Translations under genes and position numbers: made by a program
From: Guillardia theta CCMP2712
Taxonomy: Eukaryota > Protista > Cryptophyta
Direction: 5' to 3'
DNA: 60,212 nt
NCBI RefSeq assembly: GCF_000315625.1
Contig: NW_005434554.1
Location: forward strand, 1-60,212
Shown here: piece after piece, positions 46,293 through 50,742 of the stretch
Position numbering within the stretch: position 1 is the stretch's first letter
How the letters are laid out: each line of letters starts with the position of its first letter
Notes under the pieces: model-generated
Database searches by the model: none
What the model was told of the DNA's origin: nothing
The model's input: the letters and a program-made list of their open reading frames with translations, nothing else

Positions 46293-46873
46293 CTAGATAA
46301 TTCTAAACTTCATTGTCTTTTATTCCCAATAATTCAATCTCGTAGATCAAATCTGCGTTTGGTGGAATTGGACCTCCCGGGGTACCAACATAGCTGCCAA
46401 AACCATGAGTAAAGAAAACCCACAAAATTCTGCAAGCGCTTCACAAACCTGTATGCAAGCTTTGCCGGGACGAATAGTCTCCGGATTTCTCCTACCGTCA
46501 TCCCTCTAACACCCATGTCCCAACCCTTGATGACCCTCCCTCGCCCAAGGCGAAATTCAAGGTCGCCCTCGTCGAACTGCATGAGGTTTGAAGCAAGGGC
46601 CCCTTTGTAATGCACCACGACATTATAACCATCCTGTGGAAGCCACTCAGTACCTTCTGGGCCATCGAATCGTAGATGAACAATAGCATACCTCTGCACC
46701 TGGACCTTCCCCCTTCCGTAGATAATCAATCTTCAGCCCTTCATTCTCGCCTTTGGGGTCGTATATGTAACCCTTTCAAACAAGGTCAGCTATGAGCGCA
46801 AAACGATCTCGTCTACCTGGACAAGCGCTAAGCACATTATCGACAGCAGCAGCCTCTCCCTCCCTCGCCGCAT
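46293..46873 (-). CDS. FKBP-type peptidyl-prolyl isomerase with a signal peptide
   Basis: VVVHYKGAL..FD, FRLGRGRVIKGWDMGVRGMTVGEIRRLFVPAKLAY and GPIPPNADLIYEIELL; N-terminus LLLSIMCLALVQ. Confidence 0.92.
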
Positions 46874-47021
46874 GTCGCCGGTGACACCCATGGTCAAACT
46901 TGTTCGAGTTCTTTTTGCGGCACTGTGCGGACGGTATGAGTCACTGGCGCGGGCACGGTTAGAGTAATAATTTCACTTACCTTTACCCGCCCCTCGGGCT
47001 TGGTGCCTGCTTGGTGCGACC

Positions 47022-50000
47022 ATGGCGGGCAGGGCAACGTGCTTGTTCGGTGCTCAATGCAAGGTGCAGGACGAGAATTCACAGCTGCATCGATGCACAG
47101 CATGCTCCAACATGTTCCATCATGTCTGCGCGAATGAATGGAGCGAAGTCTGGAATCATTGTGGATGCAACAAACGCCAAGTGGGGAAGGAGGTGGACCG
47201 GATTCAAGGAGCTGTCCCCTCGATACCTGAGGACCGGCTGGCGCAAGCAATTGCTGGGACAAGGAATAGCGGTGAGAGTGGATCAAACTCTGCAAATGCT
47301 GGCAAGAGGTCGCGAGTTGAAGAAGAAGAAAATGACGACGACGACGACGACGACGACGACGATGACAACGACGACGGAGAGGAAGATGACGACGGGGAAG
47401 AGGAAGAGGAAGATGAGGAAGTAGATGGAGATGATCCGATGATGGAGGAGGATCAGGAAGTTCAAGAGCTGATGGAGCAGCTAGGTGCGGGCAAGGACGG
47501 CAACCTTTCGCAACGCTCGGAGTTAGCCTATTTGGGTTCTGTAGGCCAATTGATTGCTTGGCTCTACGAGAAGAAACCGGTATGCTTGTCTGCCGAGTTC
47601 AAGAGATGCATGGAGTCCGAACCAGACTATAAAGGTCCGATCACGAAGAAGATCAAGGAGCTGCTGAAACGACAGGATCTCAATCCATTTAACACAAGGA
47701 AGTTCTCACACAAACAATGGTGTTCGTACATCAAGGATGTGATGAAGAACACACGTTTGAAGCTCTCATCATTCACGTCCTTAAGATCGGGTGTCAGGTA
47801 TTTCTACAGGAGGCATCGCAAGACAAAGACATATCATAGGAAATTTGCTGCTCAAATCTCTCAATTTTACAAGATCCTTCACAACCAAAATGCTATAGAA
47901 AGGGAAGCGAATGCAGCAAAGAGAGCATCATCAGCAAAGATCCCATTACCGTTCGCGTTGTATGTCACGATGGGCGAAGCTATGCTTCCATGCAGGAGTA
48001 TGGATGTAATTGTCAGCAGAACATATCTGATTCTCAGCTGGAATTTGTCTTGCAAATCAGCCCTCACAAGTGAGATCCTATTCCAACACTTGGGCTGGAT
48101 GGATGATCATATTTGGATTCGGTTACCCGATAGCCGACCTGACCAAAACGTCGAACGGTTCGAAGCGAAGGCAATATATGCTAACCCCGCCCGCCCTCAA
48201 ATTTGTCCCTTGCTCGCACTTGGAGTTTATCTCATCAGTCACACACCAGATGGTACCAAGTTATTTGCAGGTGGAGTTAAACTAGTCACGAGTATTGTGT
48301 GACATAACCACACCTTGGCAGGTCGAAATCAGTATCATCGCTTTCTGTATTGCATTCAGAACATAATGACGGAACCTGCCCCAGAGAAAGATTCATCCGT
48401 GCAAGAACGGCCCGGCCGGGCAAGAAAGTACGATATTAGTGCCATAAGAAGGGTTGTTGGTCTTCAGATGGGCATAATGGGTATCGCGAGGGGAAGTTTG
48501 TGCTTCAGTACCATCCGCAAGGTAAGTGATTGCATGCGAACATCGAAACACTCTTCATGGAGAGCTGACACGGCAGGGTTGGCAGGGTGATTCGAATGAT
48601 GGAGGGATTGCAACAACTCAGTGTGAGTATGATGCTGCGTCGAATCTGGCAAAGAGCTCTTCTGGGCTTCCTCTTCATTCAGAGATTGTTCCCCCGCTCC
48701 CCCCAAAGTTCAGGGGAGTCGACGAGAAGACCTTGCAGATTGCAATCGAGACTTGCTTTCCGACATTACCCAAACACATGGCTGGAATCCTTGAGCATTG
48801 CCTGGCCAGCATCGTGTACCACTTCAACTACTTGAGTCTGCGGTTGGACCCTTGCCATCCTTTCTGGAGCAGTGCCTTGTTTCTGGAGCGAGGCTTGTTG
48901 GAAAAGCTCAAGGAAAAGGCATTCCTGCCCCAGACTCCGGAGGTGCCGAGGGTAAATAATGTCTGCGCTCAGAGCCAAGCTCCCCCCCCGCCTGTCGAAG
49001 TGCCCTGTGATGATCCCTCTAACCGTAATTCCTTGGACAATGTGCCCAAGGACGCAGCCTTGGTTCCTGAGCCAGAGCTGTCGGTGCAGTTGAAATCGTT
49101 GGAGAAGAAGATTGATGAACAGCGTGTTGAACTCAAGAGGATGTATAGATTGGGGATCGACGAGGTGATGAAAGAGCTGAATACTATGCACGAGCAATAC
49201 ATGCAAAAGATGCAATCAATGCAGCAGCAGATGAAACAAATGGATCAGCAGGTCAGCTGTTTGTTCAATCAGATAAACACGACACTGGAGAATCGGGAAG
49301 GTCAGGCCGTCAACCCGGAAGAGCAGGAGCAATTGCAGCGGCAGCGGCAAAACGTTGGATTCCAGCACCTGTTTCAACAGCAGCAAGAAATGCAAAGGAT
49401 GTTCCTGGAAAACAATCAGCAACATTGGCAGATTCAGAAACAAATTCTTCAGAAGCTGCAGCAAAAAGGGCAGCAGGGGAAGGGCAAGGGACGGGGGCAC
49501 GAGCAGGGTGGAAGTGCAGGGCTATCAGTGGAGCCTTCTGAGCTGAGCGCACCGTCGCAAGACTCAGAGGAATCGCAGGACGAGAGTTCAGTCAACGTGC
49601 GGTCGGAACCCATGAAGGTATCGGATGAAGCCGGAGTCATGATGAACGCCTGGACCCTCTGGCACTGCGGAAACCATCACAAAAGTCTGCCTCCTATGAA
49701 GAACTGGAAGGCGGCGCAGCTGTCAAGCCGGGCGGAGAGCAGGAGGCTGTCGGACATGAGGTACCTGATGAAGAACTTCCATCAGTTCATCAAGAGGAGC
49801 ATCCTTGATAGCCCCTTGCACGAGTTCACCAAGAGCTTGGAGCTGGATCAGTTGAAAGCTTTCATTGACGGCGCCCCGTCGCTGCAGGAGGCGAATGCTC
49901 TGTTCAAGAAACATTCTGACAGGTTCCTGTCATGGACGGAGCGCGGAGAGGCCAATGAGAGCTATAGCGAGCGGAGTGGGCAGCTTTCATGGATAACCTA

Positions 50001-50073
50001 CGTCAAGAAACTGCGGGTGAAGGAGAAAACAAGCCCTCAGGAGATGGAGTGGTTGTGGAAGAGTGAGGGTTGA
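47022..50073 (+). CDS. Crypton (tyrosine-recombinase transposon)-derived protein: N-terminal Cys/His finger, degenerate YR domain, Q-rich coiled coil, GCR1_C-like end; about 981 aa
   Basis: Introns 48271-48321 and 48522-48576 join three ORFs in frame. Motifs IPLPFALY, LILSWNLSCK, HLGWMDD, PDQ, IYANPARPQICPLLALGVYL, LFAGRNQYHRF, SGLPL...LPPKF, CLASIVYH and AWTLWHCGN..LPPMK..RRLSDMRYLM follow the order I recall for protist/fungal Crypton proteins. Confidence 0.78.
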
Positions 50074-50742
50074 TTCCAGAGACTATCAGAGGGTAGACAT
50101 ACATTAGGATAGCTGTTTGATCGGAAACATGATTGGTGGTAGTTTTCAAATGGTCTGTCGGGTTTCAGAGCCTCTAGCAGCAGTAATTTTTGTGCAGATT
50201 GGTGACATCCTGTGACAACCTTGCGTTTCAAGTAACCTTGCAATACACTTGCATGAGACTGAACTCACTGAATGACTGCAATGACTGATTACTCTCATTC
50301 CAGCTGCATCATCGCACTTATGTCACAAGTCACATCTCCCATCCATGTAGCTCCAGGGATGTTGCCCCTGTGGTGGCAGTGCGTCAGGTTTCCTATATGT
50401 CCTCTGGTGCCCTCTTTCAATTCCCAATATTTCAAGTGAGGCGGACTGCAAGTGATTATGTAAAAGGCCTAAGTACTCATAGATAAGTAAAATTTGGATA
50501 GTTGTGTGGACTTTGAAAAGTTTGAAAGACTGGCAATGGCAGAAGCGTGCTTGGAGCAGTGGAAGGCGAGAACAGGTGAGAGGAGGGAGAGAGGGAGGGA
50601 GAAAAGAGAGAAAGAATGGAGGGAGATGGGGGAGGGAGGACGCGCATCAGACAGAAAGACAGCGACAGAGACAGAGACAGAGACAGAGACAGAGTCAGTG
50701 TGAGAAAGATGGAGAGTTAGAAAGTTTATCGAGCGCTCTGAG

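What the first reader, a model, noticed from the sequence alone, without database searches (positions are those of the whole stretch)
47022..50073. Probable domesticated Crypton: intact gene, dead tyrosine-recombinase site, added zinc finger
Seen: an uninterrupted ORF of about 981 aa with two canonical introns and no obvious terminal repeats. Compared with the Crypton YR consensus as I recall it (WNL..R; K.DQ; THS.RKG; R.GW; DRY), the first Arg reads WNLSCK, the Lys reads SRPDQ, H-x-x-R reads ISAIRR (His lost), IRKGW keeps Trp, and the nucleophile region reads DSNDGGIATT with no Tyr at the expected spacing (the nearest is QCEY). Structural motifs (YANP..P.ICP, GLPL..LPP.F) and a GCR1_C-like C-terminus are retained. 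Known: Cryptons were domesticated in fungi (Ndc10/Cbf2 centromere protein, Gcr1/Msn1/Hot1) and in animals (KCTD1, ZMYM2-4, QRICH1). Inference: an independent domestication in this algal lineage, giving a DNA-binding or chromatin regulator. I am not aware of a description of one, but I cannot search.
Basis: partly seen in the sequence, partly recalled or inferred. Interest (0 to 1): 0.85.

Follow-up and report, generated by a model that had tools for sequence, protein, structure and literature searches.

The report
Dead Crypton recombinase gene kept by alga
A single-copy, expressed and correctly spliced gene of the alga Guillardia theta descends from a still-active Crypton-type jumping gene but has lost five of the six residues needed to cut DNA while its reading frame is intact, so it has probably been put to a new DNA- or chromatin-binding use.

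Summary
The gene is real: three exons (47022-48270, 48322-48521, 48586-50073). Spliced transcript contigs from three studies support both introns.

It belongs to a large CryptonS-like tyrosine-recombinase family: over 80 six-frame matches in this genome and 3470 cluster representatives elsewhere, including oomycetes and diatoms. A high-confidence family model matches Cre at Z 18.

Its nearest relatives are a 3.8-kb mobile element (four copies, 98-99% identical, different flanks) and a second single-copy lineage. Both have the same architecture, the same two intron positions and an intact R-K-H-R-W-Y set. The candidate reads K, R, S, R, deleted, Q.

It is single-copy, and its similarity to the element is confined to coding sequence. 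At least 7 nucleotide changes sit in four catalytic codons, yet the frame is open. The recombinase module evolves 2-3 times faster than in its sisters. The C-terminal domain shows no such excess.

So the dead site and the Crypton origin are supported. The 'added' zinc finger and the GCR1_C tail are not. Domestication is likely (about 0.55) but unproven, because no orthologue was found. Other first-stage notes flagged Cryptons elsewhere in this genome.

The parts
47022..50073 (+). Whole coding region of the Crypton-derived gene (978 aa after splicing). NCBI splits it into two models, GUITHDRAFT_118040 and GUITHDRAFT_118041.
   Evidence: ORFs and splice sites; spliced transcript contigs; database models P0001 and P0004.
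47022..48270 (+). Exon 1 (aa 1-416 plus the first base of codon 417).
   Evidence: Paralogues end this exon at the same position and phase.
48271..48321 (+). Intron 1, 51 nt, GT..AG, with an in-frame TGA. Its position is conserved in the C114, C282, C319, C47 and C45 paralogues.
   Evidence: A joint skipping 51 nt appears in runs X1, X2 and X4; paralogue junctions.
48322..48521 (+). Exon 2 (aa 417-483). It ends with FSTIRK, the degenerate H-x-x-R motif.
48522..48585 (+). Intron 2, 64 nt, GTAAGT..CAG. The intron position is conserved in paralogues.
   Evidence: A joint skipping 64 nt appears in all three transcript contigs; paralogue junctions.
48586..50073 (+). Exon 3 (aa 484-978 plus the stop codon).
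47040..47168 (+). N-terminal C4HC3 (PHD-like) zinc finger, aa 7-49. It is shared with the mobile sister element.
   Evidence: The Cys/His pattern is conserved in the candidate, C114 and C45. Pfam gives only weak PHDvar_NSD hits, E 0.11 and 0.03.
47313..47465 (+). Acidic Asp/Glu-rich stretch encoded by a GAC/GAA repeat. The paralogues also have one.
47469..47921 (+). Core-binding (SAM-like) domain of the recombinase fold, about aa 150-300.
   Evidence: Family alignment A1; weak Phage_int_SAM_4 hit; the family model aligns to Cre from residue 25.
47922..48936 (+). Degenerate catalytic domain plus the family-specific post-Tyr helical extension, about aa 301-600, interrupted by both introns.
48054..48056 (+). 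K345 (AAA) at the box-I Arg position. The sisters have AGA.
48135..48137 (+). R372 (CGA) at the catalytic Lys position. The sisters have AAG.
48507..48518 (+). S479-T-I-R482, the H-x-x-R motif with His replaced by Ser (AGT against CAC/CAT) and the Arg kept.
48585..48592 (+). Site of the in-frame deletion of about 22 aligned residues (26 fewer residues between the motif Arg and the Tyr position than in C114). It removes the helix after H-x-x-R and the conserved Trp.
   Evidence: Alignments to C114 and C45; splice evidence.
48619..48621 (+). Q495 (CAG) at the nucleophile Tyr position. The sisters have TAC.
   Evidence: The spacing matches Cre W315-Y324 (ranges).
49084..49506 (+). Gln-rich region, probably a coiled coil (inferred from composition and heptad-like repeats). 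It is poorly conserved in sequence but present in all sisters.
49612..50061 (+). Family-conserved C-terminal helical domain (AW..W.CGN..LPP.K..RL.DM ... RSGQL.W..YV.KLR). Pfam does not detect GCR1_C here.
   Evidence: The equivalent part of the L015 model is helical with pLDDT 80-89.

Best explanation
This is a single-copy host-resident gene of Guillardia theta that descends from a CryptonS-like tyrosine-recombinase transposase and can no longer cut DNA.

It keeps the whole transposase architecture:
- a PHD-like C4HC3 finger;
- an acidic stretch;
- a core-binding domain;
- the recombinase catalytic fold;
- a Gln-rich coiled coil;
- the conserved C-terminal domain.

Its catalytic set reads K-R-S-R-(deleted)-Q instead of R-K-H-R-W-Y, and the helix between H-x-x-R and the Trp is missing. 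I infer that it works as a non-catalytic DNA- or chromatin-binding protein. The swaps R>K and K>R keep positive charge at the phosphate-contacting positions. The finger and the C-terminal domain are at least as conserved as in the mobile relatives. The coiled coil would allow it to form oligomers.

Shown here: ancestry, fold (at family level), loss of catalytic residues, single copy, transcription and splicing, and rates that differ between domains.

Inferred: DNA binding, the cellular role, and that selection acts at host level.
For: 1. Gene model and expression. Spliced contigs from three studies remove both introns.

2. Ancestry.
- The six-frame search finds over 80 family matches in the genome.
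- The candidate forms a clade (support 0.998) with two lineages that have intact sites, C114-type and C45.
- The C114-type is a 3793-bp element with four copies at 98-99% identity. The copies share a sharp 5' boundary and, where it is retained, the same 3' end, and their flanks are unrelated. It has no terminal inverted or long terminal repeats.
- Both introns sit at the same positions and phases as in the candidate.

3. Fold. The family model (pLDDT 95.5) matches Cre at Z 18.0 (rmsd 3.1 over 270 residues), Flp at 15.9 and Ndc10 at about 15.

4. Dead site. See the column counts and the codons. At least 7 nucleotide changes lie in four catalytic codons.

5. Not simple decay.
- Synonymous divergence from the sisters is saturated, while dN is 0.3-0.5.
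- A neutral divergence of only 0.03 per site leaves this ORF open 1.5% of the time, and 0.12 per site never did in 5000 trials.
- In the recombinase module the candidate has 50 unique changes against 18 (p=1e-4) and 60 against 24.
- In the C-terminal domain it has 9 against 18 and 10 against 21. The domains differ with p=0.01.

6. Single copy at DNA level. Similarity to the element is confined to coding parts. There are no flanking repeats. An FKBP gene lies immediately upstream on the other strand.
Against: - No orthologue was found. Two word-based searches of 5.8 billion proteins found only G. theta paralogues and distant hits.
- The profile search's best non-Guillardia neighbour, Hanusia phi P0010, is only 30% identical and falls outside the clade.
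- A metagenome scan found nothing.
- The same genome holds other dead or deleted family members with long ORFs (C128, C52, C13, C72, C6). Loss of catalysis with an open frame is therefore common in this family and need not mean host benefit.
- dN/dS could not be measured on the candidate's own branch because dS is saturated.
- The candidate departs from the family consensus at 36 of 83 highly conserved columns, far more than any other member. Part of the protein is therefore evolving very freely.
- The fold was predicted for a family member, not for the candidate itself, because a spliced protein has no reference in these tools.
- The transcript contigs begin at about 47024, so the 5' end and the start codon are not pinned down.
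Confidence: 0.55

Rival explanations
1. The gene is a transposon-side regulator rather than a host gene. It would be a catalytically dead relative that binds the ends of the active sister Cryptons, or co-assembles with their recombinase through the coiled coil. It would then repress or modulate transposition, or it would be the passenger ORF of a non-autonomous element mobilised in trans.
For: Active sister elements with the same architecture coexist in the genome. DNA-binding modules are conserved while catalysis is lost. Internally deleted derivatives of the active element that keep the finger and C-terminal domains in one long ORF also exist: C6 at 695 aa, plus C1 and C43.
Against: The candidate is only 44% identical overall to the active element's protein, so shared DNA specificity or co-assembly is doubtful. 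There is no similarity to the element's non-coding ends. It is single-copy.
Confidence: 0.2
2. The gene is an inert relic: an old, immobile Crypton copy that is transcribed from a neighbouring promoter and simply has not yet acquired a stop codon.
For: The family contains many degenerate copies (C74, C51, C144 and C46 have stops). The candidate has by far the most departures from conserved columns (36 of 83). No orthologue was found.
Against: At least 7 substitutions in 12 catalytic-codon sites imply an old inactivation. Even 0.03 neutral substitutions per site would usually break the 978-codon frame. Both introns keep working splice sites. The deletion is in frame. The C-terminal domain shows no acceleration (fewer unique changes than in the mobile sisters; p 0.07-0.12 on its own), unlike the recombinase module.
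Confidence: 0.15
3. The protein is still an active recombinase that uses a non-canonical active site.
For: One Arg (R482) is kept, and basic residues remain at two other positions.
Against: The nucleophile Tyr is Gln, the Trp and its helix are deleted, and the His is Ser. In Cre, R173K alone abolishes catalysis; this rests on established knowledge of Cre mutants, not on a test here. No second copy or circle junction was seen.
Confidence: 0.03

Closest known systems
CryptonS elements of oomycetes and diatoms (Kojima and Jurka 2011, PMC3212892)
   Same: The recombinase has a core-binding and a catalytic domain, followed by a conserved C-terminal region that is not GCR1_C. Homologues of the family are found in Phytophthora, Globisporangium, Lagenidium, Aphanomyces and Nitzschia. 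The mobile sister element is about 3.8 kb, carries a single gene with introns, and has no terminal inverted or long terminal repeats.
   Different: The candidate itself is single-copy, has no recognisable ends and lacks five of six catalytic residues. The cryptophyte subfamily adds an N-terminal PHD-like finger, an acidic stretch and a long Gln-rich region (about 1000 aa against about 690 aa). The sister element's ends (AATTAG...AAATAT) are not the TATGG termini reported for most CryptonS. A direct comparison with Repbase CryptonS sequences was not possible.
DUF3504 genes of animals (KCTD1, KIAA1958, ZMYM2-4, QRICH1, WOC): domesticated CryptonA recombinases
   Same: They are Crypton-derived recombinase folds that have lost most of the catalytic tetrad, sit in intact expressed genes, and are often combined with zinc fingers (PMC3212892).
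   Different: There is no Pfam DUF3504 match in the candidate or anywhere in the genome. They derive from a different Crypton group. The animal genes have deep orthology, which is missing here. In this gene the zinc finger was inherited from the transposase, not added.
Ndc10/Cbf2, the yeast kinetochore DNA-binding protein
   Same: It has a tyrosine-recombinase fold without catalysis that is used for DNA binding. The family model matches Ndc10 structures at Z 14-15.
   Different: There is no detectable sequence relation and no evidence of a centromere role here. Ndc10 belongs with the fungal CryptonF/GCR1_C lineage.
Cre recombinase of phage P1
   Same: Best structural match of the family: Z 18.0, 270 residues, both domains. 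The family's R198, K225, H310, R313, W339 and Y348 (numbering of the P0005:20-500 model) fall at the spacing of Cre R173, K201, H289, R292, W315 and Y324.
   Different: Sequence identity is 12-14%. The family has a roughly 130-residue helical extension after the Tyr plus further domains. The candidate lacks the catalytic residues.

Membership tests
Tyrosine recombinase superfamily (Cre / lambda Int fold) | Two-domain fold: a helical core-binding domain plus a catalytic domain | tested here: met
   Tested at family level. The AF2 model of homologue P0005:20-500 (pLDDT 95.5) matches Cre at Z 18.0, Flp at 15.9 and XerH at 14.0, with Foldseek E 2e-5. The candidate is homologous to the family over this whole region. 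It could not be folded itself because no reference exists for a spliced protein.
Tyrosine recombinase superfamily (Cre / lambda Int fold) | Catalytic R-K-H-R-(H/W)-Y set | tested here: not met
   The candidate has K345, R372, S479, R482, a deleted Trp and Q495. The sisters C114, C45 and C50 have the full set.
Crypton DNA transposons (CryptonS-like) | Element that encodes a tyrosine recombinase with no reverse transcriptase and no long terminal or inverted repeats | tested here: met
   Met for the sister element: 3793 bp, one gene, no terminal repeats. The candidate locus holds the gene only, with no repeats.
Crypton DNA transposons (CryptonS-like) | Dispersed copies with shared ends, showing mobility | tested here: not met
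   The candidate is single-copy at DNA level and shares no non-coding ends with the element. The sister element meets this feature, with four copies at 98-99% identity and different flanks.
Crypton DNA transposons (CryptonS-like) | Conserved C-terminal region without GCR1_C, and relatives in oomycetes and diatoms | tested here: met
   Pfam finds no GCR1_C in 45 C-termini. Named homologues come from Phytophthora, Nitzschia and others. Description in PMC3212892.
Crypton DNA transposons (CryptonS-like) | 5-6-bp terminal direct repeats, mostly TATGG | tested here: inconclusive
   The sister element begins with AATTAGC and ends with GTAAATAT. No TATGG was seen, and the crossover site was not resolved.
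DUF3504 (domesticated animal Crypton recombinases) | Match to Pfam PF12012 | tested here: not met
   No hit in the candidate pieces or in the six-frame genome scan (the scan's controls were silent).
GCR1_C DNA-binding domain | Match to Pfam PF12550 | tested here: not met
   A remote structural relation was not tested.
Domesticated transposase gene (operational criteria) | Single copy, loss of transposon ends, intact ORF, transcription | tested here: met
Domesticated transposase gene (operational criteria) | Purifying selection after loss of mobility | tested here: inconclusive
   The support is indirect: an open frame despite multi-hit catalytic codons and a rate asymmetry between domains. Branch dN/dS could not be measured because dS is saturated.
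Domesticated transposase gene (operational criteria) | Syntenic orthologues in related species | tested here: not met
   None was found in protein or metagenome searches. No other cryptophyte genome could be searched, so synteny is untested.

The most novel reading that the evidence does not exclude
A cryptophyte has turned a PHD-finger-bearing Crypton recombinase into a non-catalytic chromatin or DNA-binding factor. The factor either marks specific chromosomal sites, an Ndc10-like solution reached independently, or acts as a host-kept trans-dominant brake on the still-active sister Cryptons. This would be the first Crypton exaptation outside animals and fungi, caught next to its living ancestor family.
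Probability: 0.15. Interest if true: 0.7.

Novelty: new member of a known kind. Interest (0 to 1): 0.5.

Why it matters
Crypton-derived, catalytically dead recombinase genes are known from animals (the DUF3504 genes) and fungi (Ndc10, the Gcr1 family). I found no paper in the searchable library that describes Cryptons or Crypton-derived genes in Guillardia or other cryptophytes.

In this genome the dead gene sits alongside closely related, apparently still mobile elements with the same architecture and introns. That is rare for old domestications. It makes the steps testable: which residues go first, and which domains stay constrained.

The result also corrects the public annotation, which splits the gene into two models. 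It adds a large, mostly unannotated recombinase family (3470 cluster representatives) and a high-confidence fold for it.

Tried and rejected
- I first read the Tyr in QCEY as a retained nucleophile. The 100-sequence alignment showed that the conserved Tyr is three residues earlier and is Gln in the candidate.
- I first used the 55-nt version of intron 2. The transcript contigs use the acceptor 9 nt downstream.
- Pfam on the candidate pieces and on paralogues gave no integrase, GCR1_C or DUF3504 hit.
- A profile search against PDB sequences found nothing relevant. Only the structure comparison found Cre.
- The first AF2 model (L015, 25-row alignment) was poor at pLDDT 63, although its Foldseek hits were already all recombinases.
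- Pairwise and three-taxon dN/dS failed because dS is saturated.
- The ESM Atlas look-up of the C-terminal domain scored below 0.8 and gave no lead.
- The metagenome scan for close relatives found none.
Element boundaries therefore rest on the loci already held.
- The raw RNA run X19 gave only 3 reads (6% of the run was read), so strand and transcript ends are unresolved.
- The spliced candidate protein could not be folded or searched as one piece because it has no reference. I did not paste it.
Full report
**Organism and gene model**

The window is contig C120 of an 87.1-Mb, 669-contig assembly. Database matches identify it as Guillardia theta CCMP2712. The ORF pieces in 47022-50073 join through two GT..AG introns.

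Laying public runs on 46800-50300 gave spliced contigs in three runs from three studies. All of them skip 48271-48321 (51 nt) and 48522-48585 (64 nt). The runs are only guessed to be RNA, but the spliced joints show that they are. The protein therefore has 978 aa and reads ...STIRK|GDSNDGG. The 'GW' is intronic.

The contigs run from about 47024 to about 50258, with a gap at the acidic GAC/GAA repeat. NCBI annotates the locus as two genes, GUITHDRAFT_118040 (316 aa) and GUITHDRAFT_118041 (516 aa).

**Family in the same genome**

Six-frame searches with exon 1 and exon 3 gave 82 and 73 matches. The best matches are only 54-61% identical in exon 1. At DNA level the locus is unique; other matches are 67-79% over short coding stretches.

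The closest relatives are four copies on C114, C282, C319 and C47.
- They are 98-99% identical to each other from a sharp common 5' boundary. Where the 3' end is retained (C114, C319) it is also shared.
- The element is 3793 bp, each copy has a different flank, and there are no terminal inverted or long direct repeats.
- C282 is truncated, C47 has an internal deletion, and C319 is broken at the N-terminus. C114 encodes an intact 1003-aa protein.

A further single-copy lineage on C45 encodes 990 aa.

All of these share the candidate's two intron positions and phases. They also share its full domain order: C4HC3 finger, acidic stretch, core-binding domain, catalytic domain, Gln-rich region, C-terminal domain. 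The zinc finger is therefore inherited, not added. It also heads other family members: C8, whose only catalytic change is H>N, the C438 and C52 copies, and the degenerate C13 copy.

**Family outside the genome**

A profile of the core-binding and N-catalytic region found 3470 cluster representatives at E<=1e-3 among 1.84 billion proteins. 502 of them score at E<=1e-30. Most are 680-700 aa.

Named relatives come from Phytophthora species, Globisporangium, Lagenidium and Aphanomyces (oomycetes), from Nitzschia (a diatom), and from the cryptophyte Hanusia phi. This is the host range that Kojima and Jurka gave for CryptonS. They describe CryptonS as lacking GCR1_C but having a conserved C-terminal region (PMC3212892).

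Pfam agrees. There is no GCR1_C, DUF3504 or Phage_integrase hit in the candidate, in paralogues, or in 45 family C-termini. Six-frame scans of the genome for GCR1_C and DUF3504 also found nothing, although those scans had silent controls.

**Fold**

With a 100-row alignment, AlphaFold2 gave a model of homologue P0005:20-500 at pLDDT 95.5 and pTM 0.92.
- Foldseek found 39 PDB matches at E<=0.001, all tyrosine recombinases.
- VIA-align gave Z 18.0 to Cre (rmsd 3.1 over 270 residues, both domains), 15.9 to Flp, about 15 to Ndc10, and 14 to IntI and XerH.

The aligned ranges (model 4-343 to Cre 25-319) place the family's near-invariant R198, K225, H310, R313, W339 and Y348 at the spacing of Cre R173, K201, H289, R292, W315 and Y324. 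This residue mapping is inferred from ranges and spacing, not from a printed residue alignment.

**Active site of the candidate**

Counts are from the 100-sequence alignment.

| Position | Family state | Candidate | Codon change (sisters to candidate) |
|---|---|---|---|
| Box-I Arg | R in 97 | K345 | AGA to AAA |
| Lys | K in 94 | R372 | AAG to CGA |
| His of H-x-x-R | H in 93 | S479 | CAC/CAT to AGT |
| Arg of H-x-x-R | R in 93 | R482, kept | - |
| Trp | W in 93 | deleted | - |
| Nucleophile Tyr | Y in 92 | Q495 | TAC to CAG |

- The second Tyr, three residues after the nucleophile, is Y in only 76 and F in 10. It is the one the candidate keeps.
- The Trp is lost in an in-frame gap of about 22 aligned residues right after intron 2.
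- The four changed codons carry at least 7 nucleotide changes.
It mislocates H-x-x-R (it is FSTIRK, not ISAIRR) and is wrong about the Trp.

**Decay or retention?**

- Synonymous divergence from C114 and C45 is saturated, while dN is 0.3-0.5, so a branch omega cannot be computed.
- In a tree of 133 sequences the candidate groups with C114 and C45 (support 0.998). G. theta C13 and Hanusia P0010 are the next outgroups.
- Tajima-type counts show an accelerated recombinase module (aa 160-600). With the Hanusia outgroup the candidate has 50 unique changes against 18 for C114 (p=1.3e-4) and 60 against 24 for C45 (p=1.1e-4). With the C13 outgroup the counts are 38 against 21 and 41 against 25. C114 and C45 are symmetric with each other.
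- In the C-terminal domain the direction reverses: 9 against 18 and 10 against 21. On their own these differences are not significant (p 0.12 and 0.07). The difference between domains has p=0.010 and p=0.009.
- The finger shows no acceleration.
- The candidate departs from the consensus at 36 of 83 columns that are at least 85% conserved. Other members have a median of 4 and a maximum of 20; C114 has 9 and C45 has 11. Of the candidate's departures, 18 fall in the 23 columns of the active-site C-terminal block.
- A simulation on this CDS shows that neutral change of 0.03 per site leaves the frame open in 1.5% of trials, 0.05 per site in 0.14%, and 0.12 per site in none of 5000.
- The excess dN of the recombinase module (about 0.12) and the multi-hit catalytic codons both imply more change than that.

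Taken together, the frame, the splice sites and the flanking domains have been kept by selection while the catalytic centre was free to change. These arguments are indirect and assume roughly clock-like change.

**Context**

An FKBP-type isomerase gene lies upstream on the other strand. No repeats flank the gene. Its similarity to the mobile element is confined to coding parts.

**Caveats**

- The same genome has other long-ORF members with damaged sites: C128 (K, K, A, S, no W, C), C52, C72, and C13, which lacks the catalytic C-terminal part.
- It also has internal-deletion derivatives of the active element (C6, C1, C43) and copies with stops.
- Hanusia P0010 also lacks the segment from H-x-x-R to the Tyr.
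- Catalytic loss with an open frame is thus recurrent in this family, so it does not by itself show host benefit.
- No orthologue of the candidate was found. The word-based searches only see proteins of 0.55-1.75 times the query length, and no other cryptophyte genome could be searched.

**Verdict**

A Crypton (CryptonS-like) origin and a dead active site are well supported. Exaptation as a non-catalytic DNA- or chromatin-binding protein is the most likely reading, at about 0.55. A transposon-side regulator (0.2) and an inert relic (0.15) are the main rivals. This is a new member of a known kind. Other first-stage notes in this scan had already flagged intact and dead Cryptons elsewhere in this genome.

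Noticed in passing
L002/L035/L036 (G000 C114:14922-20998), L003 (C282), L005/L032 (C319), L006/L037 (C47): A 3793-bp Crypton-like element with four copies at 98-99% identity. The copies share a sharp 5' boundary (AATTAGCTAGCG...) and their flanks are unrelated. It has two introns, and the C114 copy encodes an intact 1003-aa recombinase, so it looks recently mobile. I found no paper describing Cryptons in Guillardia.
   Followed up: partly
window 47022-50073: The public annotation splits this one gene into two models, GUITHDRAFT_118040 (316 aa; the first 259 aa are correct) and GUITHDRAFT_118041 (516 aa). Neither model contains the WNLSCK to FSTIRK part.
   Followed up: yes
L019 (C128:143247-146831), L022 (C52:311996-315352), L011/L050 (C13:550068-555169), L012/L041 (C72): These are other family members with long open frames but damaged catalytic sets. 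C128 is a 710-aa ORF reading K, K, A, S, no W, C. C52 is a 719-aa ORF. C13 lacks the H-x-x-R to Tyr segment yet keeps the finger and C-terminal domain. They may be further exaptations or relics.
   Followed up: partly
L007/L034 (C6:936015-940985), L009/L039 (C1), L010/L040 (C43), L008 (C216): These are internal-deletion derivatives of the active element. They join the finger and core-binding part directly to the C-terminal domain. On C6 this forms one 695-aa ORF. C1 and C43 are near-identical to each other.
   Followed up: no
P0010 (Hanusia phi, EukProt EP00960): The nearest non-Guillardia relative is a Hanusia phi transcript product. It keeps R, K and the His but jumps from 'GTHS' straight to 'FVGRTAAGLP', so it lacks the motif Arg, the Trp and the Tyr. 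This could be an alternative splice form or another dead derivative.
   Followed up: no
window 48570-48590: Intron 2 has two tandem CAG acceptors 9 nt apart (cag|ggttggcag|ggtg). All three transcript contigs use the distal one. Contigs would hide a minor proximal form that adds Gly-Trp-Gln.
   Followed up: partly
window 46334-46729 (-): An FKBP-type peptidyl-prolyl isomerase gene (Pfam FKBP_C, E 4e-17) lies just upstream on the opposite strand. No transcript contig covers 46800-47020 in the runs laid.
   Followed up: partly
family-wide (alignment A3, model m3a21f0e44103): The family has a well-predicted helical extension of about 130 residues after the nucleophile Tyr (GLP..LPP.F..CFP..LAS..H..HP.W). 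Cre lacks it, and only the Flp and Ndc10 alignments reach into it.
   Followed up: no
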